Assembly (NCBI GenBank): GCA_029953675.1
Contig: JAMWBK010000017.1
Coordinates: 1 to 17,875, forward strand
DNA: 17,875 nucleotides
Reading direction: 5' to 3'
Source of the DNA: Rhodosorus marinus CCMP1338
Taxonomy: Eukaryota > Plantae > Rhodophyta
Position 1 is the stretch's first letter. The number at the start of each line of letters is the position of its first letter. The notes beneath the pieces are model-generated. The model had not been told where the DNA came from and did no database searches. It saw nothing but the letters and a program-made list of their open reading frames with translations. The position numbers and the translations under genes are program-made. Positions 1-17,875 of this stretch are shown one piece after another.

Positions 1-7
1 CGACACC

Positions 8-720: not shown

Positions 721-819
721 ATGTCTGGAGTCTTCCCTCCTCCGCGTGTGCGTATCGTCCCGGTTAACTCCCTCGTTTACCAGTGACCGCTCAGCCTGGC
801 ACATGAGCGTGTTCTCTCG

Positions 820-3800
820 TGGTTTTCGCACCTTGTCGCCTCCTACCCGGATTCCGGTTCCCTTCCCCTTTGTCGTCAGAGCACGGCTGTAACGGCTCCT
901 TCGTCGACTTCATAAGCTCCTCTAGGATTGGTGTTGATTTTCTCTGGCAGCAGGTCGCCGCGAACCCTTTCGCTGCTCTCTTCTTCGCTGGGAACTCTTG
1001 TTCTTTTTTTTCCCCGCCTCGTGCTCACCTCCTCTACCGTCCCCGGCAACCCACATCCTCGCCGGGTCCACCCTCGCCGAAAACTGCAAATGTTCCTTTT
1101 CCGGCGACTTTGAGGACCTCGAACGTCTTTATTTCGCTTCTTCTCTCCTCTTTTTTCTCCTAGTGCTCCTCAGCATTTAGGTCTTCTCGACAGAATCGGG
1201 CGATATGTCACGCGGTGGTAGCAGGCGGTAATCTGCGGCGGGCAGCCGGGATCCTCCAGCAGCGGCAACCTGTGGTTCCATACTCCGATGATCTTTCTTC
1301 ACCGCTCCGTTTGCTCTTTCCCTCGGAAGGCTCCCTTGGGACTCCTCGTTTGAATCAGTGTTGGAAGAGTACCGCGCCGCGCCACATCCCAGTGCGCGGT
1401 TAGTGGTCAATCTGGAGGCGGTGCGTGAGTTGGTTCATTATGCTCCGAAGGGCCGTTCTCCAGGGCCCTCGGGGCTGCGGGTGGAATATCTCCGTTTCTT
1501 AAGTGATGAAGGTTTGAAGGCGTTGGCGTTGGTGGTCGAAGCGCTTGTGAATGGTGATCCCCTGTGTGAGTGTGCGTGGTTCTTGGTCGGGCGTTCGCAG
1601 TTGTGTCTGCTTTCGAAGCCCAGCCACACGGCCTCGAGCCCTGCTATTCGCCCTATTGGCCTGGTTGAGGTGGTCCGCAAATTGGCGGCGCGATGGTTAG
1701 TGAAAATCCTGGTTCCCGAATCCCGCCGTTTCTTTGGGCACGTGCAGTTAGGCGTGGGCTATCGTGGTGGCTGTGAGTTGTTGTCTGTTTTACTCCGTTC
1801 CGGAAATGGCGTACTCCCCAGATGCTGGGCTCCTCTCTGTAGATTTTACCAATGCGTTCAACCGCGTCTCTCGTCCGGCTCTCATGCACGTGCTGCGCGA
1901 AGTCTATCCTGTAGGCTTTCCCTTTGTTAGTAGACTTTATTCTCCGCTTGGCCGTGGGGCTACCTATGACACCCTTGGCGCTTCCTCACACACGTTTGCG
2001 GCGCGCACTTTTAGGGTACAACAGGGTGATCCCTTGTCCCCTTTCCTACATGCCTGTGGACTACAACTCGTCTTGCTTTGTCTTCGCTCTGAATTCCCGC
2101 AGGTTCGTACGGTTGCATACCACGACGACGTGTGCCTCCTGGGGCCCCCCGATACTCTAGCGCTCGCTTATGATCGTCTCCGCTCCTTGGCTTCGCGGGT
2201 TGACTTGGAGGTTAATCATCACAAATCGTTCTACTGGGGAGGTGTAGCTGCACAAGAGCAGCAGGTACCTGCGTCGTTCCAGGATATTTGGAGACCGGAT
2301 GGTTTTGTCCACTTAGGCATCCCCTACGGGTCGCCGTCCTTCGTTGAAGGCGAGTTGCTGCAGCTCCTCGGTAAGCACAGACAGCTGGTTGCAGAGCTTC
2401 GACGGCTACCTCCGGGCTTTCTCCAGTGCTCGTTGTTGCTGTTTCGGTATTGTTGCAGTCAGCGGTTAACCTATTGGCTTCGCTCACTTCCAACTCATTG
2501 GGGCCGGTGGTTGGCCACTCGTGCGGATGCTGAAAGTTTCCGTGACCTGGGGTATTTTCTCGATGAAGAGCTGAGCGCTCTGTCAGGTAGGCCTCCCATT
2601 GCGATTGGGGGGACTGGGCCTCTGCAATCGTGTTGTGGTCCAACCTGCAGCCGCAGTAGGGGCCTGGGGAACCGCACTTCCCACTTTGAGCAGCTTGGGT
2701 ATCTCGAAGTTCCGCAATTTGATGGCGAGCCTCTCGCGGGGTGTCTTGCTTCCCAGCGTACCGGAAAGCGCCCAAGACTTGTTTCTGGAGCTCCAAACCG
2801 CCCTGAATTCCTGTACTAGTCTCCCCGAAACCGTTCAACCCCGTCTTCCTGACTGGCGAGCTGTATTTGACCGCTCTCGAGGCTCCGCCCCGGGGATTCG
2901 TCCTGCGCCTGAACCTGTTCTAGGGGAGATTGACCCAGTGGTTGCCGCAGAAGAAGAAGTTCCAGTTGATCCTCCTGATGATTCCCAGCGCGCTGGGAGC
3001 AGAGCTCAAGCACGCACGGATGCGCTGCAAAATATCCTTTCTTGGGACTTGCACCGTGCTGCATATGGCCGACTCCTCGCGCAGATGGTCTCATCTTCTC
3101 GCGCTCGCGCCCGCCTACGTAGTCTTGGAGGGGTTCTTAGCTCTCAGTGGCTCATGACCGTACCAGCCTTTCCGCCACTCACACTGTCGGATTTCGAAGT
3201 GCGTACTTCACTGCGCTTATACCTCGGCTTACATCAGCCCCCTTGGCCGTACGAGATGGGTTCGTCGTGCCCTCTCTGCTCTCAGACTGAAGACAACGCA
3301 GATTTTGGCGCCCAGCTGCTCGCTAGTTGCCCGGTGGTGAAAGGTGCTCGAACCCGCCGCCATACACGGATCTTGAACCTGTTATACCGGGAACTTCGGC
3401 CTATAGTCCGGCAAGCCGGTCTGGAAATCGAACGTGAGAAACCTTTACCCGTCGCGGACTTTCAAAATGATGAACGCCGTGTAGCCGACCTGGTGATCAC
3501 CTGTGACGACAGCCGCCGTACCACATACGTTGATCTTGCTGTTCCTAACCCTCAAGCTAGTCGTTATCTCCCGGCTGCGGGGGAGCGCCGTGGATCTGTC
3601 GCCGCCAGCATGAGACGCCGCAAAGAGATCAAATACGCGGGGGCTTTGTCTTCCCCTGGTGTTCGTGCTTCGGCACTAGCACATCGCTTGGTACCCCTGA
3701 TCATTGAGTGCTTTGGGTTCATAGACTCTGTTGGTTCTCGCTGGCTTCGGGAGTTGTTCCGCGAACGCCCTGACCGTCTTCAATCGTTGTTTACCCGCTT

Positions 3801-3867
3801 AAGTTTCCTGCTGTGGCGCATGAATGCCGCTTTGATGTTGGAGGCGCGAGTTCTTCGCCGCACTTAG
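820..3867 (+). pseudogene. ORF2 of element 1 (RT + zinc knuckle + RLE endonuclease), split by frameshifts
   Basis: Track ORFs 1358-1930, 1764-2819 and 2599-3867 join into one RT-RLE polyprotein with shifts near 1800 and near 2590 (the latter includes a short deletion relative to element 2). YHDD at 2118-2129. The start is uncertain. Confidence 0.9.
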
Positions 3868-3958
3868 TCTTTTTTTCCCCTCGGGGGTTTTGTTTTTTTT
3901 TTTCAACCTCCGATTAAACGATTCGTTTCGCAGTAAGCAGCTGCCCTGTAAAGCTTAC

Positions 3959-3976
3959 GGTTACGTTAGCCTGGGG
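3959..3976 (+). repeat. Junction/target motif, variant GGTTACGTTAGCCTGGGG
   Basis: One mismatch to the motif at 9228, 10168, 14102, 14601, 14907; sits immediately after the element 1 3' UTR. Confidence 0.9.
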
Positions 3977-4013
3977 TTTTCACGCCTTGCGTAGCGCTTC
4001 AGGCTTTGCAAAT
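3977..4013 (+). repeat. 37-bp near-direct repeat, copy 1 (copy 2 at 7727-7763); probable retroelement 3' UTR fragment
   Basis: TTTTCACGCCTTGCGTAGCGCTTCAGGCT is identical over 29 nt in both copies; 2 mismatches over 37 nt. Confidence 0.85.
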
Positions 4014-4110
4014 GAAGAAGAAGAAGAAATAAAGCCAAAGCGAATAAAGCCAATAAAATGATGACGGGCGAAATAAAAAATGAAAGTTTTCATGTGAAAA
4101 CAAGAAAAAC

Positions 4111-4235
4111 CAGAAAAACCGTTGGTGAAGACAAACCCCAGAAAAACCGTTGGTGAAGACAAACCTCAGAAAAACCGTTGGTGAGGACAAACCCCAGAAA
4201 AACCGTTGGTGAAGACAAACCCGAGAAAAACCGTT
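4111..4235. repeat. Minisatellite, 28-bp unit CAGAAAAACCGTTGGTGAAGACAAACCC, about 4.5 copies
   Basis: Units start at 4111, 4139, 4167, 4195, 4223 with single-base variants and no spacers. Confidence 0.95.
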
Positions 4236-4323
4236 CAAGTCTCTCTAAAGTCATGAAAACCCAAAACGGGTCTTTTAGGAGCAAAGCGTTTCTGAGGCAA
4301 AAAGAGTAAAAACCAGAATATCG

Positions 4324-4608: not shown

Positions 4609-4701
4609 GAGGATTGAACAAATTTGGTTAAATCAAGACTGAAAAAAAGAAGAGTCCGACGCTTGAAGTGTTCTCGTCGAAGATTTCGAACTATAGTAGC
4701 C

Positions 4702-6113
4702 ATGTTCGCCATGGGTAGAATCATCACGTTCCTTCTGTTAAGTCTGACGCTGCTGGTGACGGTGAGATCTACCGGAGCGGATTCTGCGGATTCAACGTGC
4801 TCTGATGAGCCGCAGTTTACACGCTTTGCTCCTGCTTCCAATCGCTTTATAGCGAATTTGCAAACCAAAAAAGGTTCTGTCGTCGCGACGATCACTATGG
4901 ATGTCGTGGCGAGGAACAACACAAACTGCTTTCTTGCGACGTTTACAGCTGCGGCATCGTCGAGCAGTCTGCTGAAGCTCAGGGCAGGAATCTTCACGAC
5001 AGCAGGGGATCTTCCCACCGGTATGAATAGGGTCACAAGGAGGAAGCTCGTTCCTCAACTCGACCCTTTGAGCAACCCCAGGAGCGAAATGTTCATCTGT
5101 CCCATGAATATGGTGCGGCGGAATACAGATTCTTGCTGTGGACTGCTTGAATTTTTAGCATTTGTCCAAATCCGTGTTGCTCGTTCGAGCGGTACCAAAA
5201 TTGTAACGGGGTATCTAACGCCGACTGGACGTACAAATCGGCCATGCCGAGTCCAAGACCCGGCGAACCCTTTCCGCTACGTCTGTACATTGGAAACCGT
5301 CTGTACACCGGAACCCACCTGCGAGTGTGCCCCGGGCACCTGCCGAGGAGAGGATGGGAGTTGCATTCTTATTAGTGACTTTTCTGCAAACTGTGCAAAT
5401 AATCAGGTGTGCCCACCTGCCCTTCTCCGTGCTCTCCCGTCGACCTTTTGGCGAAGCAGAAACAAGTCTGACCATGTCTCCCTGATTCGTTCCCCTCTGC
5501 TCATGTTTCGTATAGTTTGCTGCGGCGAACCCCGAGAACGAAGCGTGTGAATGCGCGGATCTTGAGTGCTCAGGATCGGAATGCATCGAAGACGGACAAT
5601 GCGTCGGAGCTAGAGGGTGGGGCCAGCAATGCCCTTCTGGCGAGGTATGTCCGTGGACTCTCAACCACAAGTAAACCGAACGGTAATTTACGTTCGTAGA
5701 TGTGGCTCAGAACAAATCTTTCTGTGTCCCGTTTTTGTATCAAGTTTGGAGCAGCGGATGATGCGGGGATATGTAGTTGCCAAGACACTTGTCCGCCCGG
5801 GAGATGTCTTGACGTCGTCAGCAAAGTTTGTGTGGGTCCTAATCCCGGCAATTGTCGCCAGAGTTCCGCGGTATGAGAGATTTGCAACTGGGTCATATTG
5901 CACAAATCGAATTACTCACAATAACTTGGGTATTCACACGGTTCACGCACATAGTTCCAATTCTTGGATCCAGATACGGGCTTTTGTCTTTGTTTGCAAG
6001 GCTGTAATAACTGTGCGCCGGGATCTGTACGTTTGTTTCCCCATTCTGACATCACGCGTGTTCGCCTTTCGAATTGCGATGGACTGCGTCAGTGTTCCTG
6101 TCACGAAAACTGA
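4702..6113 (+). CDS. Four-exon host gene for a putative secreted cysteine-rich protein (exons 4702-5406, 5516-5644, 5745-5870, 5955-6113)
   Basis: N-terminal hydrophobic stretch (MFAMGRIITFLLLSLTLLVTVRS) looks like a signal peptide. Three GT..AG phase-0 introns (donors GTGTGC, GTATGT, GTATGA) join Cys-rich exons in frame (129, 126, 159 nt), ending CSCHEN-TGA. Alternative in-frame acceptor at 5699; alternative start at 4711. Confidence 0.75.
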
Positions 6114-6404
6114 GAAAAAAAAACTAACATGTAATATGGATCTAATTGTCGTCATGTAGGTGCCCACACCGACGGCGGATAAGAGCCGGTGTGAATGTGT
6201 TTCCCAGATTGACCCGTGACCTGATCGTACTAGCCAATTTTCGCGAGAAAGTAAGAGCATGAATTTTCCTCAACGCAGAACGCGAATCTCTCCTGGACTT
6301 TACACATAGTCTGTAACACCCCACCGAGCTAGAAAAGTAAAGGAAAAGCTACACACGCTGCCGCTCACGCAAGGTTACTCAGCTCTCCCTTCACACCGCC
6401 TCCA

Positions 6405-7023
6405 TCACCGCCGCCTTGACGTCGATGGCCTACTACTTATCTATGCGGTGATGACGAACGGTAATGACGGGGCGAAGACGACTCCCTCAAAAACCATAAG
6501 ACTCGATCTGAACATCAGGGAGGTGTCACAGGGGACAGTGGCGCGCGAGTTCATCACGAATGCGATTATGGCGCAGAGTCCAATTCCCGCCCAAGGTAGA
6601 ACAGTGAAATAGTCCCATCCGATGCGTGAGGCTTGGCACAGACGTTGCATTCAGGGGGATTGATGGAGGCAGCAGCTGCATCGCCTGCGGGAAGCGCCTT
6701 AGACCAAAGAGCGAGCTTTCGAATACGAGCAAAAGTGCGGGAGTTGAGGCGGGAAGTTGTCCATCGCCTAGCCAGCGAGAGCTGCAGTTCCAGTTGATCC
6801 GTTGAGCTGGCGAGATCCTCAAGATGTTCGGCATTAGGCCCCGGGACACGCAGTATCCAGACGGCTCATAAAAGGGATTGCCAGCGGCATTATTCCGAAG
6901 CCCGCGGAGCCACGCGGCATAAGAAGCAATCGGGTGAATGCGAACGCTCGTAGCCAGGCCAAGCCCTCCCCACTTGCCAGGTAATCGAATTTGGGTTTTC
7001 ACTGTATTAGGTGAGAGGAGCAT
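6405..7023 (-). pseudogene. Decayed, internally deleted lineage-B-like retroelement fragment in inverted orientation
   Basis: QIRLPGKWGGLGLATSVRIHPIASYAAW matches QISLPCRWGGLGFATRARIQPIAFFSAW of element 4. CNVCAKPH (alternate frame) and FHCSTLGGNWTLRHNRIRDEL match the zinc knuckle. GSRLRPVI...AIDVK with stops matches the RLE of element 3. Confidence 0.85.
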
Positions 7024-7566: not shown

Positions 7567-7767
7567 TTGGAGTGGCTGCGGAAATGTTTTGCTGAGCATC
7601 CTGTTGAATATTTGGAACTTTTGCGTCGTTTAAGCGTGTCTCTGTGGCGCTACTCGAGCAGCATGCTTGGTCAGGCGCGCCATAGGCGCCTGGGTTTGCA
7701 CGCTTCCCTACCTAGTTCTTAGTCCCTTTTCACGCCTTGCGTAGCGCTTCAGGCTATGCTAATAAAG
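7567..7767 (+). pseudogene. 3' remnant of another lineage-A-like element (C-terminus, stop 7720-7722, 3' UTR ending in AATAAAG)
   Basis: LEWLRKCFAEHPVEYLELLRRLSVSLWRYSSSMLGQAR aligns with element 1 SRWLRELFRERPDRLQSLFTRLSFLLWRMNAALMLEAR. Confidence 0.7.
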
Positions 7768-7994
7768 TCCACCCACTCTGCGACTAATCAGCGAACGTGA
7801 AGGGTTCGAACACCACGGCGTCGGATTGGGGACTGACAACTTTGTCCAAGCATCCTGCGAGCGAGTTTTGGCACGGCACAAGTCCACCCACTCTGCGACT
7901 AATCAGCGAACGTGAAGGGTTCGAACACCACGGCGTCGGATTGGGGACTGACAACTTTGTCCAAGCATCCTGCGAGCGAATTTTGGCACGGCAC
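7765..7994 (+). repeat. 115-bp tandem duplication at the 5' truncated end of element 2
   Basis: 7765-7879 equals 7880-7994 except one base (CGAGTTTT vs CGAATTTT); AAG begins both copies and the following sequence. Confidence 0.95.
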
Positions 7995-9222
7995 AAGCAA
8001 CTCACCGACGCCATTGAGCACCTACCCGACAGCATGCTGCAATCGGCCTGCTTGCTTTCCCGCTTTTGTGCCGGTCCCAGACTCAACTACTGGTTGCGCA
8101 GCCTGCCTCCAGCTTGGGGCTCGTGGATCGCGGCTAAAGCCGACGAAATGACCCTGCAACACTGGGGAACGCTCTTGGATGAGCCCCTCGATCTTGAAGC
8201 TGCTCCCGACAGGGACTTTATTCGTGCACAGATCGCTCTACCGTTGCGATTAGGGGGATTCGGCGTCGCTGACCGTGGGCTGGTATGCTCGCCAGCGGCG
8301 GTTGCCTCCTGGGCTACCACGCTGCGAACGTTGGTGACCTTCCAGATGCGAAGTGCCTGCCTCTTGGCTCGAGCTTTGACCAACGAGGATCCAGTGACCC
8401 TGCCGCCCCCGCTTTTGACAATTTATGATGGTCTTCAACACGCGTTCAGGAGGTGCAACGCCGTGCCGGACGCAAATCGGTCCCGCTTTCGTTCCTGGAG
8501 GGAGCTGTTATGGGGACGAGCTGAAGCGATTGAGGATTGTCCCCTCGACCGAGTTCTTGCCGATGACGGAGAGGCCAGCCCCGGGTCACCTGTTGCAGAC
8601 TACCCGTGTTTGAGCCGATTGTGGAGCTCCCGCACTGATGTGATTCAACATAGCCTCACCTGGGGCCAACACAGTGCCGCTCACACAGTCATGCTCAATT
8701 CTCCTCTCACGCCGCCTACCACTGCCGCTCGTCTCCGCGGCATGGGAGGCCACCTCTCGCACTTGTGTTTAACCACTCTACCGTCGTCATTGAGTCATCG
8801 TCTCGATGCTTTCCAGTTCCGTTCTGCCGCACGGATCTATCTCGGTTTGCCACAGGCTCCGTGGCACTCTAATCGGCCGTCTTTCTGTCAGGGATGTGAG
8901 AGCCGGATTGACGCTAGTGGCTACCACTTCCTGGGTTCCTGCGGACTGTTACGAGGTCTCCGTACGAGGCGTCACACTCGCCTCAAGTACATCCTCAGCG
9001 AATCTTTGACTCGGATAGGGCATACGGTTGAGGTTGAGTCGGAACTGCCCAGATCCATCTCGGACTCTGCACCGCCCCGTTGTATAGCCGATCTCCTCGT
9101 CTCCGACGCTGCTGCCAGACGCTCAACATATGTGGACCTTGCGATTACCTGCCCCGTGGCCAGCGCCCACCTCACCGCAGCCGCCCGCCGCCGGGGGGCC
9201 GCGGCTTCAGCCCTTCGAAGAG
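7765..9222 (+). mobile_element. Element 2: lineage A subfamily, truncated at both ends (late RT region, linker, zinc knuckle, first half of RLE)
   Basis: Open frame from about 7880: EGFEHHGVGLG, RLNYWLRSLP, QIALPLRLGGFG, CQGC...HFLGSC...RTRRH, IADLLV...YVDLAI; homology stops at ASALRR before the RLE lysine motif. Confidence 0.92.
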
Positions 9223-9248
9223 TCTGGGGTTACGTTAGTCTGGGGTAC
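9221..9248 (+). repeat. Junction motif in tandem: AGTCTGGGG TTACGTTAGTCTGGGG TAC
   Basis: About 1.5 contiguous units define a 16-nt period; fused directly to coding sequence of element 2. Confidence 0.93.
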
Positions 9249-10089
9249 CCAAAAACTCCTCTCCAACTGGAGTCACCGACGGGCATTCGAGGAAATGGTG
9301 GAGAACGCGGAGATCAGCGAGACGGCACGTGCGCGAATACGCTCCTGCAAGGGATCAGGAGGCGGTACTTGGCTGCGAGACTTGCCAATGAAACACGGAC
9401 GCGGCCTAAGTAGCGGAGAACTGAACCTGAGCCTTCGACAACTGTTGGGATTGCCCCTGCCGGGTGTACGAATACTTAGTACGTGTACGATATGTTCCCA
9501 ACCACACGACGCTGCAGGCATTCAACGCCTTCACCACTGCACCAGCTCTACCGGCAGTTGGACAATTCGGCATAACATGGTCAGGGACGCCCTGGCGACA
9601 GTGCTGAGACAATGGCGACTAGAAGTGACAATAGAACCGACCGGACACTACCAAGGCAGTCGGCTTCGGCCTGACATTCTAGCCCGACACCCACGAACAG
9701 GCAAGCTCTACGTGATCGATGTGAAGGTGACCTCGCCTTTGCAAAGAACACACCTCCACAAAGCGTCTTGGGAGACCGGGTATGCGGCACGGAAAGCGGA
9801 AAAGTTTAAAGAGTCCAAATACCGTGACAGTATCGGAGAACATAACGACGACATCTTCGTCCCCTTCTGCCTGGAAACATTTGGGCAGATGGGACAACAA
9901 GCGAGTGAGTTCCTCAAGGAAGCGACTATACACCTGGATCAGCGGGCAACGCAAGTAAGTGAGGCTCGGGCGATCTTGAACCGCACTTTGTGGAAAGGAA
10001 ACGCTATCCTTGCCACCCAGGCTCGTCGTGTCGACGAAGCAGACTATGACATCGTCCCTATCTTCGAACGTAGCCACACAACCCATTAG
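9247..10089 (+). CDS. C-terminal part of ORF2 (zinc knuckle + RLE), 5'-truncated
   Basis: CTICSQPH...HHC...RHN; RLRPDILARHP...YVIDVKVTSP...AEKFKESKY; FVPFCLETFG; stop TAG at 10087-10089. Confidence 0.85.
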   Translation, partial: TQKLLSNWSHRRAFEEMVENAEISETARARIRSCKGSGGGTWLRDLPMKHGRGLSSGELNLSLRQLLGLPLPGVRILSTCTICSQPHDAAGIQRLHHCTSSTGSWTIRHNMVRDALATVLRQWRLEVTIEPTGHYQGSRLRPDILARHPRTGKLYVIDVKVTSPLQRTHLHKASWETGYAARKAEKFKESKYRDSIGEHNDDIFVPFCLETFGQMGQQASEFLKEATIHLDQRATQVSEARAILNRTLWKGNAILATQARRVDEADYDIVPIFERSHTTH

Positions 10090-10167
10090 GGGTTTCTTTG
10101 CTGACCAATAGGATCCTTATTGCTTCTTAATGGGCTCCAATAGGGAGTTCTTCAGTAAAGTGTACGC
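9249..10167 (+). mobile_element. Element 3: 5'-truncated lineage B (subfamily B1) copy with intact 3' end
   Basis: Begins directly after the motif in mid-ORF2, ends with the 3' UTR ...CAGTAAAGTGTACGC before the next motif. Confidence 0.93.
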
Positions 10168-10185
10168 GGTTACGTTAGTCTGGGG
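10168..10185 (+). repeat. Junction/target motif GGTTACGTTAGTCTGGGG
   Basis: Exact motif between the 3' end of element 3 and the truncated 5' end of element 4. Confidence 0.95.
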
Positions 10186-10187
10186 CA

Positions 10188-10883
10188 ATTCCTCTTCTCC
10201 AAAGCGCAATCAGCCGGGGTGTGTTCCGGACTGGGATTTTCGGATCCTTTACCATGCGACACCCCGATCGACAGGTGAGCCTGTACACCGGGCACGGTTT
10301 AGAGGCGGATAACCTGCTGGGGTTCAACGAGCGGCAACGACTCGCCGGCGGAGATGTCAGGGCTCAAACGCTGAGACGAGCGATCGAGCAGATCATACGC
10401 ATCCGCGCGCGGCTGAGCCGTCGACATCTCTCGTTTACAACTCTCGCCCGAGTGCACGAGATGCTGGACCAACGGCTTGAAAAGTTACAAGCCCTTCAAC
10501 AGCAACCTGCGGTATCCAGGGAGAGCGCGGAACCCCTAACGACTGCAGCCGCACCAAACGCAGCCGCTGAAGCCTCGTCGTCTCCGGACGATGCACAGGC
10601 AGCCTGTGGGACTGTTGCCACTCAGGGTGACTCCGGTGGAACATCCCAAGTACCGCAGGATGTGGAAGAAGAGGACAATCCCCATGCGGAACTCTCGTGC
10701 AACTTGCCGGAACCTCCTCAACTTAAGCGCTCGCGCCGGTCTGCCAACGGATCTAGCACGGATGCAGAAATGACACCAGCTCCCCTCGACCCCACACCGA
10801 GCGAGAATGGACTACAACCTGAAACTGCAGCCAATACAAACCCGTCGGTTCAGCAGGAAGCGCAGGACAACGAGCAATCATAA
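10188..10883 (+). CDS. ORF1 C-terminal portion (5'-truncated) of element 4
   Basis: IPLLQSAISRGVFRTGIFGSFTMRHPDRQV is nearly identical to element 7 ORF1; acidic/Pro-rich tail; TAA at 10881-10883. Confidence 0.85.
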   Translation: MPLLQSAISRGVFRTGIFGSFTMRHPDRQVSLYTGHGLEADNLLGFNERQRLAGGDVRAQTLRRAIEQIIRIRARLSRRHLSFTTLARVHEMLDQRLEKLQALQQQPAVSRESAEPLTTAAAPNAAAEASSSPDDAQAACGTVATQGDSGGTSQVPQDVEEEDNPHAELSCNLPEPPQLKRSRRSANGSSTDAEMTPAPLDPTPSENGLQPETAANTNPSVQQEAQDNEQS

Positions 10884-13800
10884 TGCCGTCCAGACGCAGG
10901 GGACGTAAACGCCCACGAGAAGAGCCTCTGTTCTTCTCTGACCGGGAGGCCTGGATTTGCCGCTGGAACGCTTTCGTAGCTGAGATCACGGAGGAGGGGA
11001 GGCATTGGACGCGCATCACACATTGCCCGGTGCCCACACGACACTTCGTGCCCCGAGCACACGTTTCTACATGGAGCCGGCTTCTTCGGGCTGCCCTCGA
11101 GCTTTCTCTGGACGCGACAGCACCTCCATTAGCGAGCCTGCTTCTCGTCGGCCTTCCGGGTCTGGTCCTGGGCCACTCCACCCTTGACACAGGGGTACAG
11201 GTCGCACATGTACTAGAAGGAGAGTTCCAGCGGGTCTGGACGGCCCTTGAGGAGAAAGCCGCCTCAATGAAACCCCCACCTACACCACACGGTGCCGAAG
11301 ACGTTCGTCGACGAGTCGATGGCCGCCGCAAACAAGCACTTAAACTAGCACGACTCGGCCGCCTCTCGGATGCTGCAAGAAGACTCGAGGCCACCGAAAT
11401 GGCGCCTTTCACAGCGGCTACCTGGCGGCAACTACAACAGCTCTTTCCGAGCCCCGCCAGTGTGGATTCACCGGTGGAGATTGTGGAAGCCCTCCAAGGC
11501 CTACTCACGACGGACAACGACACACTGAAGAGGCGGTGGGATCCAAAAATGGCTGCCGACGAAGGCCTCCTCTCAATCGTGGCACGACTACCTCAAGGGA
11601 CGAGCCCTGGACCGAGTGGAATGCGCGCGGAACATTTGCAAGGGGCGAACCAACAGACTCAGGTAGCACTGATTCGGGTCTTGCGCCAACTCGCCACCGC
11701 GCCCGGGCGATTCTCACCCCTTCTGCTACGAGCCTTGCGTAGCAGTAGACTTCTGCCTTTCTCGAAGCCAGCACAGGGGGGTAACTCCCAGGCCAAGGCA
11801 GGGATCCGCCCAATAGGCGTGCCGGAGGTCCTACGCAAAGTGGCAACTCAGTGGGCGCTGCGAGCGGTGATGGACCGGGTCCGCGAGCTGTTGGTGCCGT
11901 TGCAGCTGGGAATCGGGGTCAGCGGTGGCTGTGAACGGTCACTGCACGCCATCCAGGCCCACCTGTCATGTGAACCAGACTCGGTTGCACTTCGACTGGA
12001 CCTCGAGAACGCCTTTAACCGCATTGACAGGCGAATTGCCAAGAAACTGGTGGCCCAGCACTTCCCTGAGCTCACAGCGGTGTATAGGCTCGGATATGGA
12101 GGCGATGGGGAAACACCGACGCTTTGTGGATGGCGGACGACGCAAGAAGACAACCACCTGCACAAGGACAGACTGACGCTGCAAGCAGAAACCGGAGTAC
12201 AACAAGGCGACCCTTTAGGTCCGGTGCTACATGCGCTCTCCCTGGCCCCTTTTCTCAAGGCACTCAGCAACAAGTTTCAGGGAGTCACGATCGTCGCCAT
12301 CCATGACGACATCACTCTGGTCGGCGCATTGCCTATATTGAAGGAGGCTCTCCAATGGGGACAGACCCTGCTACCGTGCCTTGGAGCCCGCCTGCAGCTC
12401 AGCAAATGCAGCCTTTATGGTCGATCCCTCACCACTACACGCTTGGTGAACCGTGCGATTCCCGGCGTGCAAGTGACTAGGGAAGGCCTCACAATCCACT
12501 CCATCCCCATCGGCACTCGGCAGTACATCGAGCACGAGTGTAGACGGCTGCAGAACAAACACGAGACGCTGTTCAAGGAGATTTCGAGCCTGCCAACCGA
12601 TGAACTGCCTATCCAGCTTGCGCTTTACAGGTATTGCGCTGAAACGAGGTTGGATTACACCTTGCGATGCCTTGCCTACCCGTTTGGACGAGCTCTGGCC
12701 AGGGAAGCGGACAGTATGAGCCGATACCACTTAGAGGTCTTGTTTGGTGGCCTCTGCACGACGGCCTTGGTCGAGGATGAGCTGATACACCCGGTCAACG
12801 AGCAGATTTCGTTGCCCTGCCGATGGGGCGGATTGGGGTTCGCGACCCGTGCAAGAATACAGCCGATTGCGTTCTTCTCGGCCTGGGCGCAGACCCTGAG
12901 AGACCATGCGGGTCAGTGGCCCTATATAACGGAGGTGGAGCGACAGGTCAGGCAAGGTGGCGACATACACATCAGCCACCTAGGCCGACTGCAGGTGTCA
13001 ACGGAGACGATCGGTGAGCAAATCCGCGCGTCTAGTCGTGCTATAGAGCGGAGACTGTGCCCAGACACGGCGCCGCGGATCCGGAGACTGGCCAAGCTGC
13101 CCGAATTGAGAGACGAAGCCGCACCTGAAGTAGCGGACTCCCCTCGCGATTGGAACCATGGTTCAATACAACAAACCCTCTCTAGGGAGGCACACCATCG
13201 CGCGTTCCAACGTTTGGTCGGCAACGAGGGCGTTTCGCATGAACACCGTGCAAGAATCCGATCGGCGGCCGGCTCGGGTTCGGGGGTATGGCTGCGGGAA
13301 CTACCGTTGCTAGAGCCGAGAAAGCTGGACTCACAGGAATTGCAGGTAAATGTTCGACAACTGCTGGGGCTGCCGATTCCGGGGTTGCGGACAACGGAGC
13401 AGTGCACCAGTTGCCGTAGGAAACATGGCCCAAATGGGGTGCAACGATTTCAACACTGTCCAACATCGACGGGACTATGGCAGAGACGGCACGACGAGCT
13501 CTGTACGGAGCTAGGGAGATGGCTCAACCGATGGAATTTTCTTGACATACAGCAAGAACCGCAGAGGTATTTTGAGAATTACCAGCTGCGACCAGATATC
13601 GTGGCGACCCATCCAAAGACCTTTCAAAAAGTACGCGATCGATGTGACGGTGATTTCACCGCTACAGGAAAAGTACATAAGGCGTGGCAGTGCAGAAAAC
13701 GGGTATGCAGCGAAACTGGCGGAGAACTACAAGCTCGCGCACTATAAAGAGGCGATGAGTGTGGAAAAGCCCGAGGAGAAGTTCATCCCGATCGCGATAG

Positions 13801-14021
13801 AGACCTTTGGGCGGAGCGGGAGGTTGACGCAAGACTTTTTGCGGGACAGTTGTAAACACTTGTTGCATCGAGATGAGGAGCTGAGGGATGCACGATCCCA
13901 GTTAAACAGGATCCTATGGCAGGGCAACGCGGCGATTGCGCTTGGCGCTCTACGTGCGGACCAGTTGGAGAACCCACTGGTTCCTGTTTTTTCTTTTGAA
14001 CGTAGCATGAGACCCCGGTAG
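10883..14021 (+). CDS. ORF2 of element 4: reverse transcriptase + zinc knuckle + RLE endonuclease, one +1 frameshift near 13626
   Basis: Track ORF 10883-13747 continues in 13542-14021 after an extra A in CAAAAAG. Motifs: GTSPGPSG, IRPIGVPE, LDLENAFN, GVQQGDPLGP, AIHDD (12296-12310), CTSC...HC...RH, RPDI...YAIDVTV...AENYKLAHY. Confidence 0.95.
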
Positions 14022-14101
14022 CGGGGTTGTTGTGAGTGATTCCCTAGATAGCAATCGGCTTAGTGTTACGTCGCATTAGGCGACTGCCCAATAAAGCTCA
14101 C

Positions 14102-14118
14102 GGTTACGTTAGTCTGGG
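14102..14118 (+). repeat. Junction/target motif GGTTACGTTAGTCTGGG followed by T and 13 A
   Basis: Motif directly after the element 4 3' UTR; A run at 14120-14132. Confidence 0.93.
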
Positions 14119-14119
14119 T

Positions 14120-14600
14120 AAAAAAAAAAAAATGCGCTGGATGTGACGGTGGTGTCACCATTACAGGGAAAATATTTGCGGCGGAGCCAAGATGATAGCG
14201 GATACGCGGCGAGAGCTGCGGAGAAGTGGAAAATCGCTCACTACAAAGAAGCGATGGTGATCGAGAAACCGGATGATAAGTTCATCCCGATAGCAATAGA
14301 GACGTTTGGGCGTACGGGGCAAATGGCACAGGAGTTCCTCCGGGACAGCTGCAAGCACTTACTGCATAGGAGTGAGGAGCTGAGAGACGTGAGATCCCAG
14401 ATAAACCGGCAACTATGGCGAGGTAACGCAGAGATAGCATTAGGCGCTTTGCGCGTGGACCAGCTGGAGAATCCGCTGGTACCTGTTTTTTCTTTTGAAC
14501 GTAGCATGAGACCCCGGTAGCGGGGTTCCAGTAAGTTTTTCCCTAGATAGGATTAGACGTAGTGTTGCGCTGCAGTAGGCAGCTGCCCAGTAAAGCTTAC
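14120..14600 (+). mobile_element. Element 5: short 5'-truncated B2-related copy (RLE C-terminal half + 3' UTR)
   Basis: LDVTVVSPLQ...FIPIAIETFG...FSFERSMRPR is a diverged paralog of the element 4 C-terminus; stop at 14520. Confidence 0.93.
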
Positions 14601-14618
14601 GGTTACGTTAGTCTGGGG
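14601..14618 (+). repeat. Junction/target motif GGTTACGTTAGTCTGGGG
   Basis: Exact motif between elements 5 and 6. Confidence 0.95.
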
Positions 14619-14906
14619 TTTGGGCAGATGGGACAACAAGCGAGTGAGTTCCTCAAGGAAGCGACTATACACCTGGATCAGCGGGCAACGCAAGTAAGTG
14701 AGGCTCGGGCGATCTTGAACCGCACTTTGTGGAAAGGAAACGCTATCCTTGCCACCCAGGCACGTCGTGTCGACGAAGCAGACTATGACATCGTCCCTAT
14801 CTTAGAACGTAGCCACACAACCCATTAGGGGTTTCTTTGCTGACCAATAGGATCCTTATTGCTTCTTAATGGGCTCCAATAGGGAGTTCTTCAGTAAAGT
14901 GTACGC
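14619..14906 (+). mobile_element. Element 6: 288-bp 5'-truncated copy of subfamily B1
   Basis: Matches 9880-10167 with two substitutions seen by eye. Confidence 0.95.
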
Positions 14907-14957
14907 GGTTACGTTAGTCTGGGGTTAGTCTGGGGGTACAGTTACGTTAGTCTGGGG
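14907..14957 (+). repeat. Irregular tract of junction-motif units (telomere-like)
   Basis: GG TTACGTTAGTCTGGGG TTAGTCTGGGGG TACA GTTACGTTAGTCTGGGG. Confidence 0.92.
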
Positions 14958-15020
14958 TGACGGGTTTGGACGGCTTTGTTTGTGAAAAACGACGGAAAAA
15001 GGTGATAAAAAGTTACAAGT

Positions 15021-16612
15021 ATGATTGTGAAGGAGGTACGCGGGCCGTACCCCGAGCCTCTTGTGATCGCGGGCCCACACACCTCGGGTACCCGCGAAAT
15101 GGAGAGGGCGAAAGAGCTGCTACAAGAGCAGCAGCAGCAGCAGCAGCAACAGCACCAGTATAGGGGAGCAGAACAGGAGGCAGAGAGGAATGCAGAACAG
15201 GGTGCAGCGGAGCAGGCCACAGCAGACCCAGCTGTCGCCTTTCTCCACCAACTGCAGAGCTACGACCACTGCTATACCGCCCTGGGAATCGGCCAGTCGG
15301 ACATCGCCGACTTCTACCAGGCCGCCTTCAACCTCTATTCCCGCATCAACTGCTCAAAAGAACTTCAATCAGTGACAGGACGTCTGAATGAGCTCGCCAA
15401 AAAACCGCATATGTGGCAAGACGGACGAGCCACTACGACCCCGCCTCAACCCCCGCAGCAGCACCCGCGGACGGCGGCGGTCAATCAACATGCGGCAGAA
15501 CCCATCATCAATCAACTTGCGGAGGGGACAGGTGTCCTTGCCTCACTGGACTATGCCACGGCCTTCCCGGTTGCCGGTATCAGCAGCACACGGCCAACGT
15601 ACGCTCAGAGGACTGCCCAAAGTACTCCAGCTCGAGAATCAGAGGCTCAACTCCGACCAGCCGGGCGCCCGGGCCCACAGAGCCAGCAGGCAGCGCTACG
15701 ACAGTTGCACGCCACTGTGGGAGGGTCCTCCTGGGGACCTGAGACCAAGCCGGTACTGGCGACCCTGAGGAATGTAAGACCGCCACGGATGGACGAGGTA
15801 GCCCCATCGGATTTCACCACGGTCCTTTGCAGAGCCTTGGGGATTCCGAGCTCTTATGTGGCGCACGTGGACTTCATCGCTTCCCATGCGTGCTTACTCT
15901 GCCATCCGGACGCGATTCCGATTCTACAAAGCGCCATCTCTCGGGGCGTTTTCAGGACGGGCATCTTCGGTTCGTTCACCCAGAGACACCCCGATCGGCA
16001 AGTGACTCTCTACACGGGCCAGGCACTGGATACAGACAACCTGTTGGGCTACAATGAACGTCAGCTCATTGCCCCAGCGAATATCGGGGCTCAGACCCTG
16101 AAACGGGCGATTGAACAGACTATCCGGATCCGCGCGAGACTCCGCAGAAGGCAACTCTCGTTCAACACACTCGCAGCGATACACGAGTACCTGGAGAGCA
16201 GACTCGGAGCCCTACAAGCCACACAACGTACTCCAACGGTACCCGGGGAGAGCGCGGAACCCCCAGCGCCTGCAGCCGCCACGAACGCAGACCCTGAAGC
16301 CTCGTCCCTTCCAGGGGATGTACAGGCAGACCGTGGGAGAGTTGACGCCTCGGTTGAGACCAGTGCGACTTCCCAAGTACCTGAGAACGCAGCACACGAA
16401 GACAATCCCCATGCGGAGCTCCTCTGTGCAACCTTCCGGAGCCACCTCAACAGAAGCGCTCGCGAGTGGCCGCCGATGGCACCGGACCGGATACTGAGAT
16501 GACTCCGGCAGCCGTGGAGACTCCACAGGATACCACTGGGACACAGGTTGCCGTTGACGGCAACCATCACGCGATGGACACGCAGGAGAGCCAGGAAAAC
16601 CCAGCGCAATAA
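15021..16612 (+). CDS. ORF1 of element 7 (about 530 aa, unknown family), one frameshift near 16420
   Basis: Track ORF 15021-16502; after the shift the alternate frame reads CNLPEPPQQKRSR (as in element 4) and ends at TAA 16610-16612. PolyQ, central conserved block, disordered tail. Confidence 0.85.
15129..15152 (+). repeat. (CAG)6CAACAG polyglutamine tract in ORF1
   Basis: Read directly; encodes Q8. Confidence 0.9.
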
Positions 16613-17875
16613 TGCCGAGCAGACGTAGGGGAATCAAACGACGCCGCGAAGAGCCTCTTTTCTTCTCGGATCGTCAAGACTGGATCAGGCGGTGGAGCGT
16701 CTTCGTCGACGACGTCACGGAAGGAGGCAGGCAGTGGACGCGCCTTACACACTGCCCGGTTCCCACACGGCGATTTGTGCCACGCGCCCAGGTTCACACA
16801 TGGAGCTGCCTCTTCCGTGCTGCATTAGAGCTCTCTATGGACAGCACCGCACCAGCAAACGCCAGCCTGCTTCTTGTCGGACTTCCAGGCCTTGTCCTCG
16901 GACACTCTGCACTTGATGTTGGCATTCAGGTATCGCATGTGCTTGAAGGAGAATTCTCTACGGTCTGGAGCGCTCTAGAGGACAAGGCGTCTATGCTGTC
17001 GCGTACTACCGCACCGCAAGGAGCTGAAGCGGTTCGACGCAAACATCTCGGGCGCCACAAGCGAGCGCTGAAACTAGCACACCTTGGCCGCCTTTCAGAC
17101 GCAGCTCGGAGCCTACAGGCCACCGAAATGGCACCTTTTACCGCGGCTACGTGGAGACAACTACAAGCGCTCTTTCCCAACCCGGCGGAAGGTGACTTAC
17201 CAGACGAGATTGCACACGCACTGCAATCTTTGCTCGCTCTGAATACCGAAACACTAAAGCGGCGGTGGGATTCAAGAAAAGCGGCCGACGAGGGCCTCAT
17301 GTCGATCGTGGCACGTCTTCCTCAGGGCAAGAGCCCAGGCCCTAGCGGTCTCCGAGCGGAACACCTCCAAGGTGCAACCCAACAGACGCAAGTGGCGTTG
17401 ATTCGTGTATTGCGACAACTGGCGACCGCTCCTGAGAAATTTTCCCCGGCTCTGACCCGCGCCCTTCGCAGTAGTCGACTCCTGCCGTTCACGAAGCCTA
17501 ACAAGGGTTCAGTGCCGCAGGAGCATCCCGGAGTTCGCCCTATCGGAGTGCCAGAAGTTTTGCGCAAGGTAGCAACGCAATGGACTCTTCACGCGGTTAT
17601 GGACAGGGTGCATGAGCTCCTGGTGCCCTTACAACTGGGTATAGGAGTAAGTGGCGGGTGCGAACGCTCGCTTCACGCGATCCAGGCCCATTTGTCATGC
17701 GAACCCGATTCGGTGGTCCTTCGCTTAGACCTTGAGAATGCCTTTAATCGCATCGACCGACGCCTTGCCAAGCAACTGGTGGACGAACACTTGCCGGAGC
17801 TTGCACCAGTGTATAGACTTGGCTATGGAAGCGACAACGCGGACTCACCGACGCTCTGTGGCTGGCGATCTTCCT
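16612..17875 (+). CDS. ORF2 N-terminal part of element 7 (to RT motif LDLENAFN), partial; frameshift in T run near 16660
   Basis: MPSRRRGIKRRREEPL, then open to the window end after a one-base shift: GKSPGPSG, VRPIGVPEV, QLGIGVSGGCE, LDLENAFN. Missing from the ORF track, probably because it has no stop inside the window. Confidence 0.9.
   Translation, partial: MPSRRRGIKRRREEPLFFSDRQDWIRRWSVFVDDVTEGGRQWTRLTHCPVPTRRFVPRAQVHTWSCLFRAALELSMDSTAPANASLLLVGLPGLVLGHSALDVGIQVSHVLEGEFSTVWSALEDKASMLSRTTAPQGAEAVRRKHLGRHKRALKLAHLGRLSDAARSLQATEMAPFTAATWRQLQALFPNPAEGDLPDEIAHALQSLLALNTETLKRRWDSRKAADEGLMSIVARLPQGKSPGPSGLRAEHLQGATQQTQVALIRVLRQLATAPEKFSPALTRALRSSRLLPFTKPNKGSVPQEHPGVRPIGVPEVLRKVATQWTLHAVMDRVHELLVPLQLGIGVSGGCERSLHAIQAHLSCEPDSVVLRLDLENAFNRIDRRLAKQLVDEHLPELAPVYRLGYGSDNADSPTLCGWRSS

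What the first reader, a model, noticed from the sequence alone, without database searches (positions are those of the whole stretch)
14907..14964. Candidate novel telomeric repeat TTACGTTAGTCTGGGG with telomerase-like stutter
Seen: full 16-nt units, an 11-12 nt unit lacking TTACG, variable G runs (3-5) and a short TACA insert, all with strict G-strand bias. Established: the Yarrowia lipolytica repeat is TTAGTCAGGG (one change from TTAGTCTGGG) and the Schizosaccharomyces pombe core is GGTTAC with heterogeneous repeats. Inference: these units were made by a telomerase whose template can realign at the internal GTTA duplication (GTTAC/GTTAG), which would give the short unit. I do not recognise this 16-mer as a described telomere repeat.
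Basis: partly seen in the sequence, partly recalled or inferred. Interest (0 to 1): 0.85.

Follow-up and report, generated by a model that had tools for sequence, protein, structure and literature searches.

The report
Telomere-like repeat between red-alga LINEs
The 58-base tract is real and consists of copies of a 16-base repeat (TTACGTTAGTCTGGGG) lying at the joint between two copies of a site-specific retrotransposon in the red alga Rhodosorus marinus; the repeat is a good but unproven candidate for this alga's telomere repeat, in a phylum whose telomeres are poorly known.

Summary
The tract at 14907-14964 holds two full 16-nt units, one 12-nt unit lacking TTACG, a TACAG insert and G-runs of 3-5, all G-rich on the + strand. 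The window is a whole 17,875-bp contig of the Rhodosorus marinus nuclear assembly. It is mostly a same-orientation array of 5'-truncated non-LTR retrotransposons that encode a reverse transcriptase and an R2-type restriction-like endonuclease. GGTTACGTTAGTCTGGGG forms the last 18 nt of every complete 3' end, about 20 nt after an AATAAA-type signal, and once it is followed by A13. So the first unit of the finding belongs to the retrotransposon, not to telomerase. Free-standing units also exist. A 3'-truncated copy in the window is capped by 1.5 units. An R. marinus transcriptome contig has a second capped 3'-truncated fragment and a perfect 12-unit tandem array. Best reading (confidence about 0.6): the 16-mer is the R. 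marinus telomere repeat, and the LINE carries one unit at its 3' end and inserts right after ...CTGGGG. That makes this tract an interstitial telomere remnant. Terminal position, a telomerase RNA template and the "stutter" mechanism remain untested. No searchable paper gives this motif.

The parts
14907..14924 (+). GG + full 16-nt unit. This is the 3' terminal 18 nt of LINE copy E7.
   Evidence: Identical to the tails at 10168-10185 and 14601-14618 and preceded by the conserved ...CAGTAAAGTGTACGC 3' UTR. 14619-14924 is 99% identical to 9880-10185.
14925..14936 (+). Free-standing short unit TTAGTCTGGGGG (lacks TTACG; G5).
   Evidence: Its origin is unresolved: telomerase or replication slippage at the GTTA repeat, or a LINE copy truncated to its last 11-12 nt.
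14937..14941 (+). TACAG spacer.
   Evidence: Together with the preceding G it resembles the GTAC(GCG)G segment that lies just before TTACG in the E4/E7 3' UTR. A similar GTACGAGGAG|TTACG lies before the L009 array.
14942..14957 (+). Free-standing full 16-nt unit TTACGTTAGTCTGGGG.
14958..17875 (+). LINE copy E8, the longest 5' region in the window. It starts with TGACGGG..., has ORF1 at 15021-16502 and ORF2 from about 16612, and runs off the contig end.
   Evidence: ORF2 76% aa identity to 10883-13747; ORF1 66% to 10185-10700.
14619..14924 (+). LINE copy E7, 5'-truncated to 306 nt.
   Evidence: 99.3% identical to 9880-10185. It starts directly after ...CTGGGG of E6.
14133..14618 (+). LINE copy E6, a 5'-truncated 3' end with its tail at 14601-14618.
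   Evidence: 76% identical to 13626-14118.
10186..14132 (+). LINE copy E5. It has the C-terminal part of ORF1, ORF2 at 10883-13747 (RT + CCHC + restriction-like endonuclease, frameshifted at the end), an AATAAA signal, the tail at 14102-14119 and then A13 at 14120-14132.
   Evidence: Pfam RVT_1 4.5e-9. Best PDB sequence matches are LINE-1 ORF2p and R2. The poly(A) is seen.
9246..10185 (+). LINE copy E4, 5'-truncated, with an intact C-terminal endonuclease domain (motif at 9568-9720) and its tail at 10168-10185.
   Evidence: The RLE consensus is met. The AF2 model's top seven Foldseek matches are all R2 proteins.
9221..9245 (+). Free-standing 1.56 units (AGTCTGGGG + TTACGTTAGTCTGGGG) capping the 3'-truncated copy E3.
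   Evidence: It is not preceded by any LINE 3' UTR (row E3_J2).
7727..9220 (+). LINE copy E3. It covers ORF2 from about aa 512 onward and is truncated at its 3' side inside the endonuclease domain.
   Evidence: tblastn; translation.
1..3976 (+). LINE copy E1 of a diverged family, running off the contig start, with variant tail GGTTACGTTAGCCTGGGG at 3959-3976.
6411..7008 (-). Inverted LINE ORF2 fragment without a tail.
   Evidence: 85% nt identity to L008.
4702..6259 (+). Host gene NDN08_000999 (membrane-associated protein). It identifies the contig and the organism.
   Evidence: P0186 (KAJ8900690.1) is 99-100% identical over its exons, and its contig length is 17875.

Best explanation
The tract is an interstitial remnant of the telomere repeat of Rhodosorus marinus, trapped between two copies of a retrotransposon that targets that repeat. 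The window is a whole small contig of the R. marinus assembly. It is probably a near-duplicate of a chromosome-end region. It carries a same-orientation array of 5'-truncated non-LTR retrotransposons with ORF1 and an ORF2 made of RT, a CCHC motif and an R2-type restriction-like endonuclease. The LINE mRNA ends about 20 nt after an AATAAA/AGTAAA signal, and its last 18 nt are GG + one unit (TTACGTTAGTCTGGGG). Inferred mechanism: the endonuclease nicks the C-rich strand at the unit boundary (...CTGGGG^TTACG...). The nicked strand pairs with the terminal unit of the RNA and primes reverse transcription. The copy therefore lands between two units with its sense strand continuous with the G-rich strand and its 3' end pointing toward the chromosome end, the same polarity as SART1 of Bombyx. 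Repeated insertion splits a tract into the 1-3-unit pieces seen at each junction. The free-standing units are most simply telomerase products. This includes the units capping elements eroded from their 3' side. Shown here: the element anatomy, the tail, the junction rule, the tandem array in the same species and the organism. Inferred: the nick site, the pairing step, the telomerase origin and the terminal location.
For: (1) All 7 core motifs are on the + strand, which is the sense strand of seven LINE copies. (2) Every complete 3' end finishes ...A(A/G)TAAAG...GGTTACGTTAGTCTGGGG, across families that share no other nucleotide similarity, and one copy continues with A13. (3) Every LINE 5' junction follows ...CTGGGG, or the poly(A) in one case. 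The same holds in R. marinus RNA contigs L007/L010/L011 and L009. (4) The RT is of non-LTR type. The RLE motif C-X2-C..HHC-X9-RHN-X19-E-X10-RPD-X14-D is present (consensus taken from PMC12857005). The fold of the C-terminus matches R2 proteins at E 3e-5. (5) The unit exists apart from LINE 3' UTRs. L009 2874-3067 has 12.1 perfect copies, on a contig whose host gene is R. marinus UniRef A0A7S2ZJP1. (6) Two LINE fragments truncated at the 3' side are capped by G-strand units starting in different phases: window ...CGAAG|AGTCTGGGG and L009 ...GGTGGAG|GGGTTACG. This is the polarity expected if the end lies 3' of the G-rich strand, and it parallels seed-primed de novo telomere formation on truncated MoTeRs (PMC7367193). 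(7) The window's only host gene has a near-identical twin, NDN08_000998, on a 2.47-Mb contig. The consecutive locus tags suggest the twin is the last gene of that contig. (8) A precedent for this polarity exists: SART and TRAS insert into (TTAGG)n in opposite orientations (PMC7265360).
Against: No chromosome end was examined. The contig begins and ends inside LINE copies, and no tool could read the ends of the large R. marinus contigs. The assembly paper marks telomeres but does not give their sequence. No telomerase RNA template (CCCCAGACUAACGUAA) was found or could be searched for outside the window. The 12-unit array comes from a short-read transcriptome assembly, so its copy number and its flanks across a 194-nt perfect repeat may be unreliable. 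E1's tail abuts non-LINE DNA next to a host gene (3976|3977), so not every insertion is inside a repeat tract. Some related transcript contigs (L008, L013, L014) end ...AATAAAGCTCAC|AGTCTCCCCC with no full unit. The MoTeR/FoTeR relatives have the opposite polarity.
Confidence: 0.6

Rival explanations
1. The 16-mer is only the retrotransposon's own 3' tail. Tandem tracts and 'free' units are made by the LINE reverse transcriptase, through slippage or re-priming on the terminal unit or through copies truncated to their last 9-22 nt. This would be like the short tandem 3' tails of CR1- or I-type LINEs. The real telomere of R. marinus would then be some other sequence, and the array need not be subtelomeric.
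For: The unit is the last 16 nt of every complete copy, and a family-specific variant (TTAGCC) recurs in E1 and in L007, so it is inherited with the element. 5' truncation is extreme in this array (306, 486, 940 nt). The TACAG piece resembles the GTACGCGG segment upstream of the tail in E4/E7. E1's tail abuts unique DNA.
Against: The 12-unit array and both 1.5-unit caps are not attached to a LINE 3' UTR, and the caps follow 3'-truncated fragments. The units begin in different phases (AGTCTGGGG..., GGGGTTACG...), as expected for seed-primed addition. The array is perfectly regular. Five of the six complete LINE 3' ends carry exactly one unit and the sixth (E7) is followed only by irregular pieces, so no clean slippage-made ladder is seen.
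Confidence: 0.22
2. A Drosophila-like terminal array. The chromosome end lies to the left of the window, each LINE was added by priming on the bare end, and the unit is simply the RNA's 3' end copied at each addition. No telomerase repeat is involved.
For: The arrangement is head-to-tail and same-orientation, with 5'-truncated copies. There is exactly one tail per junction, and one junction has a poly(A). This is the general layout of HeT-A/TART arrays (PMC5537684, listed).
Against: The elements keep an apparently functional endonuclease domain. Two fragments are truncated on the 3' side and then capped, which erosion from the left cannot produce. A 12-unit array exists. The strand running 3' toward that supposed end would be C-rich. 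In L009 the unique host gene lies 5' of the array.
Confidence: 0.05
3. The tract is a chance low-complexity stretch or an assembly artefact.
For: The contig is a small unplaced piece made largely of repeats.
Against: There are 7 exact 11-mers on one strand against 0.0045 expected. The same tail and junction occur in independent R. marinus transcriptome assemblies.
Confidence: 0.01

Closest known systems
SART1 / TRAS1 of Bombyx mori (telomere-repeat-specific LINEs, R1 clade)
   Same: They insert into the telomere repeat at a fixed nucleotide and in a fixed orientation. SART1 has the same polarity as here: its sense strand is the G-strand and its 3' end is joined to the repeat. Telomere-like bits of its 3' UTR are thought to pair with the nicked bottom strand (PMC7265360).
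   Different: The SART/TRAS endonuclease is APE-type and N-terminal, whereas here it is a C-terminal restriction-like endonuclease. SART1 joins through a long poly(A), whereas here reverse transcription usually starts at the unit and poly(A) is kept in only one of six copies. The target is 16 nt rather than 5 nt.
MoTeR (Magnaporthe), FoTeR (Fusarium), Cnl1 (Cryptococcus): CRE-clade telomere LINEs with REL endonuclease
   Same: They have an RT plus a C-terminal CCHC and RHD/N...E...R/KPD...D/E endonuclease. They form head-to-tail arrays of mostly truncated copies separated by 1 to a few telomere units, and truncated copies are healed by de novo telomere addition (PMC12857005; PMC7367193).
   Different: Their 5' ends face the chromosome end and the sense strand carries the C-strand repeat (TAACCC), the opposite polarity to this case. 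Sequence relatedness to them was not tested; the nearest named relatives found are only uncharacterised proteins of R. marinus and Closterium. These elements also have an ORF1.
R2 (28S rDNA-specific LINE)
   Same: R2 is the best structural match of the C-terminal domain (Foldseek E 3e-5, probability 1.00). It is site-specific, and initiation at the RNA 3' end is precise.
   Different: The target and copy organisation differ. R2 has a single ORF with N-terminal zinc-finger and Myb motifs, and none were detected here.
Long or irregular telomerase repeats of yeasts
   Different: The organism is a red alga, not a fungus, so the resemblance must be convergent. The only long array seen is perfectly regular.
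Athena/Coprina endonuclease-less Penelope-like elements
   Same: They are telomere-associated retroelements with short telomere-repeat stretches at copy junctions (my own knowledge; also touched on in 10.1101/2021.04.23.441226, listed).
   Different: The RT here matches LINE-1 and R2, not the PLE/TERT type. An endonuclease is present. No hammerhead ribozyme was found. The repeat polarity is opposite.

Membership tests
Telomerase-made telomere repeat | Head-to-tail tandem array of the unit | tested here: met
   L009 2874-3067 has 12.1 copies at 100% match, in R. marinus. Within the window there are only 1-3 irregular units. Caveat: the array comes from a short-read RNA assembly.
Telomerase-made telomere repeat | Located at the physical chromosome ends, with the G-rich strand running 5'->3' outward | not testable with these tools
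   The contig starts and ends inside LINE copies. The ends of the large contigs could not be fetched. The paper marks telomeres without giving a sequence.
Telomerase-made telomere repeat | Strand asymmetry: one G-rich strand, with a TxAyGz-like unit end | tested here: met
   There are 7 core motifs on the + strand and 0 on the - strand, and each unit ends in G4.
Telomerase-made telomere repeat | Complementary template in a telomerase RNA | not testable with these tools
   The window has no reverse-strand copy and no Rfam telomerase RNA match. The genome and transcriptome could not be searched by DNA.
Telomerase-made telomere repeat | Added de novo to broken ends from short seeds | tested here: inconclusive
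   Two 3'-truncated LINE fragments are capped in different phases of the unit. This is compatible with healing, but these are static sequences only.
Telomere-repeat-specific non-LTR retrotransposon | Non-LTR-type reverse transcriptase | tested here: met
   Pfam RVT_1 above its cutoff. The best PDB sequence matches are LINE-1 ORF2p and R2.
Telomere-repeat-specific non-LTR retrotransposon | Endonuclease domain (here restriction-enzyme-like: CCHC, RHD/N, E, R/KPD, D/E) | tested here: met
   The regex match is at 9568-9720, and also at 13487-13639, where the downstream I-D-V motif lies out of frame. The key residues are invariant in alignment A2. The top Foldseek matches are R2 proteins (the model has only moderate confidence, pLDDT 55.6).
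Telomere-repeat-specific non-LTR retrotransposon | Fixed insertion point and orientation relative to the repeat | tested here: met
   All copies that have a tail are on the + strand. The 5' junctions follow ...CTGGGG in the window and in L007, L009, L010 and L011. Exceptions: E5|E6 is joined through poly(A), and the E3 5' side is unclear.
Telomere-repeat-specific non-LTR retrotransposon | The target repeat is the host's telomere | not testable with these tools
   See the rows above.
CRE clade (MoTeR/FoTeR/Cnl1/SLACS/CZAR) | Phylogenetic placement of the RT within the clade | not tested
   No named CRE-clade sequence was available. The database neighbours are unnamed.
CRE clade (MoTeR/FoTeR/Cnl1/SLACS/CZAR) | 5' end toward the chromosome terminus, with the C-strand repeat on the sense strand (MoTeR/FoTeR) | tested here: not met
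   The sense strand carries the G-rich unit (versus PMC12857005).
Penelope-like Athena/Coprina | PLE/TERT-like RT, no endonuclease, hammerhead ribozyme motifs | tested here: not met
   The RT matches L1 and R2. An RLE is present. No Rfam hit has E<=1 except a spurious malK-III match.

The most novel reading that the evidence does not exclude
The 16-mer arrays might not be made by a conventional telomerase at all. The LINE's own reverse transcriptase could be copying just the terminal unit of its RNA over and over onto chromosome ends. A retrotransposon would then be acting as the telomere-repeat synthase in a red alga, a living intermediate between LINE-type TPRT and telomerase. The evidence does not exclude this. 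The unit is the RNA's 3' end, tail-only pieces are plausible, and neither TERT nor a telomerase RNA was examined.
Probability: 0.06. Interest if true: 0.95.

Novelty: new member of a known kind. Interest (0 to 1): 0.55.

Why it matters
Telomere sequences of red algae are described as "mostly missing or fragmentary" (PMC7046594). If confirmed, a 16-nt unit would be unusually long for a non-fungal eukaryote. It would also give the template needed to find the red-algal telomerase RNA. The accompanying element would be a telomere-repeat-targeting LINE from a phylum absent from the survey of such elements read here. It combines a restriction-like endonuclease (as in MoTeR/FoTeR) with the opposite, SART1-like polarity, so it could show how target and strand choice evolve. 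Confirmation is cheap, because a near telomere-to-telomere assembly and long reads of this species are already public.

Tried and rejected
(1) Penelope-like or Athena-type element. Rejected because the RT is L1/R2-like, an endonuclease is present and there is no hammerhead.
(2) Fungal (Yarrowia- or S. pombe-like) origin. Rejected because the contig is from R. marinus.
(3) A conserved 3'-terminal hairpin that includes the unit. MFE z-scores were -0.2 to -2.0 and the stem is not kept in L007, so the idea was dropped.
(4) Tandem 16-mer in public collections. There were 0 hits in JGI metagenome contigs with two patterns and 0 in viral contigs. GTDB genomes gave 2 single, evidently chance hits of the 18-mer in bacterial MAGs. 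The first collection evidently lacks the MMETSP-type samples that hold L009.
(5) Literature search for the 10-, 11-, 12-, 16- and 18-nt forms on both strands. Only unrelated primer-type hits turned up.
(6) The first word-indexed protein search found only homologues of 29% identity or less. The exhaustive HMMER search was needed to reach R. marinus.
(7) Distant relatives L001-L004 show no telomere-like ends.
(8) DNA-binding domains in ORF1 or the ORF2 N-terminus. No Pfam hit appeared even at E<=5.
(9) Microhomology at 5'-truncation points. None was convincing except the A-run at E5|E6.
(10) L012-L014 gave no further arrays.

Full report
OBSERVATION. The sequence at 14907-14964 reads GG TTACGTTAGTCTGGGG | TTAGTCTGGGGG | TACAG | TTACGTTAGTCTGGGG | TGACGGG. 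That gives two full 16-nt units, one 12-nt unit lacking TTACG, a 5-nt insert and G-runs of 4, 5, 4 and 3. The G-rich strand is always the + strand. The tract cannot be chance: the 11-mer core GTTAGTCTGGG occurs 7 times exactly on the + strand and never on the - strand, against about 0.0045 expected per strand.

The 18-mer GGTTACGTTAG(T/C)CTGGG(G/T) also occurs at 3959, 9228, 10168, 14102 and 14601. Self-comparison and translated searches show that the window is mostly a same-orientation array of non-LTR retrotransposon copies. These are E1 (1-3976), E3 (7727-9220), E4 (9246-10185), E5 (10186-14119 plus A13), E6 (14133-14618), E7 (14619-14924) and E8 (14958 to the end). There is also one inverted fragment (6411-7008) and one host gene (4702-6259). 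ORF2 (10883-13747) has a Pfam RVT_1 domain, and its best matches among solved structures are LINE-1 ORF2p and R2.

The ORF2 C-terminus carries C-X2-C...HHC-X9-RHN-X19-E-X10-RPD-X14-D. This is the restriction-enzyme-like endonuclease consensus quoted for SLACS/CRE/MoTeR/FoTeR (PMC12857005). The key residues are invariant among homologues. An AlphaFold model of moderate quality (pLDDT 55.6, pTM 0.60) finds R2 retrotransposon proteins as its top seven PDB matches, with E from 3e-5 to 1.6e-3. There is no hammerhead ribozyme and no telomerase RNA match in Rfam.

THE UNIT IS THE ELEMENT'S 3' END. An alignment of the five complete 3' ends shows that families sharing no other nucleotide similarity all finish ...CCC(A/T)(A/G)TAAAG(C/T)(T/G)(T/C)AC(G/GC)GGTTACGTTAGTCTGGGG. 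An AATAAA, AGTAAA or TGTAAA signal lies about 20 nt before the end. In E5 the tail is followed by T + A13, a polyadenylated RNA end captured in DNA. So the first unit of the finding (14909-14924) belongs to E7, whose 306 nt are 99.3% identical to the end of E4. It is not a telomerase product.

Every 5' junction of a copy sits directly after ...CTGGGG (3976|3977, 9245|9246, 10185|10186, 14618|14619, 14957|14958). The exception is E5|E6, where an A-run of the truncated E6 probably paired with the poly(A).

ORGANISM. A word-indexed protein search found only distant, unnamed relatives. An exhaustive HMMER search found proteins 67-81% identical, one of which is Rhodosorus marinus UniRef A0A7S0BF83 from the MMETSP transcriptome. 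The ORF at 4624-5550 then matched KAJ8900690.1 (NDN08_000999, R. marinus) at 99% identity, on a contig of exactly 17,875 bp. The window is therefore one of the four small contigs of the CCMP1338 assembly of Lee et al. 2023 (PMC10250338). Its near-identical twin, NDN08_000998, lies on a 2,472,615-bp contig. The consecutive locus tags suggest that the twin is the last gene of that contig, so the window may duplicate a chromosome-end region; this is inference only. The paper reports telomeres on 12 contigs but gives no repeat sequence in the text or in the held supplements.

THE UNIT ALSO EXISTS ON ITS OWN. In the window, E3 is cut off on its 3' side inside the endonuclease domain, and AGTCTGGGG + TTACGTTAGTCTGGGG follows directly with no LINE 3' UTR. 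R. marinus transcriptome contigs show the same architecture. L007, L010 and L011 have ...AATAAAGCTTACCGTTACGTTAGTCTGGGG followed at once by a 5'-truncated copy. L009's host gene is R. marinus A0A7S2ZJP1. In L009 an ORF2 fragment cut off on its 3' side is followed by GGGG TTACGTTAGTCTGGGG TTACGTTAG, then 32 unrelated nt, then a perfect (TTACGTTAGTCTGGGG)x12 array (TRF: 12.1 copies, 100% match), and then a 5'-truncated copy that again starts right after GGGG.

There is a caveat: a 194-nt perfect repeat in a short-read RNA assembly cannot be trusted for copy number or for the linkage of its flanks.

MECHANISM. The most economical model is a telomere repeat plus a LINE specialised on it. The endonuclease would nick the C-rich strand at ...CTGGGG^TTACG.... 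The 3' end of the nicked strand pairs with the terminal unit of the LINE RNA, so reverse transcription starts at the unit rather than in the poly(A). The copy lands between two units, and incomplete reverse transcription gives 5' truncation. Successive insertions chop a tract into the 1-3-unit remnants seen at the junctions. The same pattern holds for MoTeR arrays, whose stable interstitial tracts are two repeats or fewer (PMC7367193).

The polarity (sense strand = G-rich strand, 3' end toward the terminus) is that of SART1 and is the opposite of TRAS, MoTeR and FoTeR. With this polarity, erosion of a chromosome end removes element 3' ends, and healing adds G-strand repeats from a short seed. 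The two capped 3'-truncated fragments look exactly like that. They begin in different phases of the unit (after ...GAAG and after ...GGAG), like the 1-4-nt seeds documented for MoTeR. The nick site, the pairing step, the telomerase origin and the terminal position are all inferences.

THE IRREGULAR PIECES. That is possible. Replication slippage at the same 4-nt repeat, or a LINE copy truncated to its last 11-12 nt, would give the same sequence. (G)TACAG+unit resembles the GTACGCGG+unit end of the E4/E7 family, and GTACGAGGAG+unit precedes the L009 array, so a tail-only LINE copy is a real alternative. The only long array seen is perfectly regular. "Stutter" is therefore not supported, and not excluded either.

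RIVALS. (a) The unit is only a LINE tail expanded by the LINE's own RT, and the true telomere is something else (0.22). This is favoured by the family-specific TTAGCC variant and by E1's tail abutting unique DNA. It is disfavoured by arrays and caps that are not attached to any 3' UTR. (b) A Drosophila-like end-addition array with the terminus to the left (0.05). This is contradicted by the retained endonuclease, by the capped 3'-truncated fragments and by the C-rich outward strand it would imply. (c) Artefact or chance (0.01).

COMPARISON AND NOVELTY. Neither the 16-mer nor its sub-strings on either strand occur in the searchable literature except as unrelated primers. Reviews state that red-algal telomere data are fragmentary: AATGGGGGG in C. 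merolae, TTATT(T)AGGG in Galdieria, and TTAGGG in Porphyra reads (PMC7046594). A 2025 review of telomerase RNAs mentions rhodophytes only in passing. Known telomere-associated LINEs are listed for insects, Giardia, Chlorella, Magnaporthe and Anolis (PMC10088271) and now Fusarium, with none in red algae. I file the finding as a new member of known kinds: an unusual telomerase-type repeat, and a telomere-repeat-specific LINE that pairs a restriction-like endonuclease with SART1-type polarity.

VERDICT. Confidence is 0.6 that the tract is an interstitial telomere-repeat remnant at a LINE junction. Interest is 0.55: a specialist would find a 16-nt red-algal telomere and its dedicated LINE noteworthy, but confirmation only needs a look at the ends of an already public assembly, whose authors evidently recognised the telomeres.

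Noticed in passing
window 4110-4235 (and 4083-4250): A 28-nt tandem repeat (CCAGAAAAACCGTTGGTGAAGACAAACC, 4.5 copies, 94% match) sits in an A-rich, low-GC stretch (GC 0.43) just upstream of host gene NDN08_000999.
   Followed up: no
window 3977-4017 and 7727-7767: A 41-nt segment (TTTTCACGCCTTGCGTAGCGCTTCAGGC...) is repeated at 93% identity. One copy follows E1's tail (..TTAGCCTGGGG) and the other follows TTAGTCCC, just before E3. It may be a duplicated 'unit + flank' or the true 5' end of one LINE family.
   Followed up: partly
window 7765-7997: A 115-nt tandem duplication (2.0 copies, 99% match) lies inside LINE copy E3 and duplicates part of its ORF2.
   Followed up: no
window 4702-6259: The annotated gene models NDN08_000999 and NDN08_000998 differ only at the C-terminus although the underlying DNA fits both. 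Paralogue NDN08_004883 aligns collinearly over 4837-5445 without introns, so the annotated introns may be wrong.
   Followed up: partly
window 15127-15158: A (CAG/CAA)n run encodes a poly-glutamine stretch near the N-terminus of LINE ORF1.
   Followed up: no
L009 2250-2330: A tRNA-Lys(CUU)-like 3' half (anticodon arm, T arm, GGTTCGAGCCCCAC) is preceded by TTTAGTCTGGGTTAC, which matches the telomere-like unit junction in 14 nt. ARAGORN calls no tRNA. It could be a truncated tRNA or SINE-like piece, and the resemblance may be coincidence.
   Followed up: partly
L009 2841-2872: A 32-nt sequence of unknown origin (ATCTGTGGACAACCCCCATGACGTACGAGGAG) interrupts the repeat tract, breaking a unit after TTACGTTAG. 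This does not fit the ...CTGGGG^ junction rule.
   Followed up: no
window 3959-3976; L007/L010/L011 152-171: A variant unit with TTAGCC instead of TTAGTC recurs in the window (E1 tail) and in R. marinus transcripts (GGGGTAACGTTAGCCTGGGG). This suggests a family-specific tail variant.
   Followed up: partly
L008 4100-4125; L013 and L014 3' ends: Some transcript contigs read ...AATAAAGCTCAC|AGTCTCCCCCGAGG. The 3' UTR is joined to AGTCT and then unrelated sequence without the full unit, so the tail has a deletion or an alternative junction.
   Followed up: no
proteins P0016 (MEO1413535.1) and P0185 (GCA_039819145.1 JBCBSL010000655.1, L012): Relatives of this eukaryotic LINE are deposited as proteins of bacterial MAGs (Bacteroidota; Cyanobacteria bacterium J06638_22). 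These are probably eukaryotic contigs mis-binned into MAGs.
   Followed up: no
proteins P0036, P0039 (Closterium sp. NIES-65, CAI5968655.1, CAI5969758.1): Very long 'unnamed protein products' (5900 and 4213 aa) contain 4-6 separate stretches matching this RT. They are probably fused gene models across LINE arrays in a charophyte alga.
   Followed up: no
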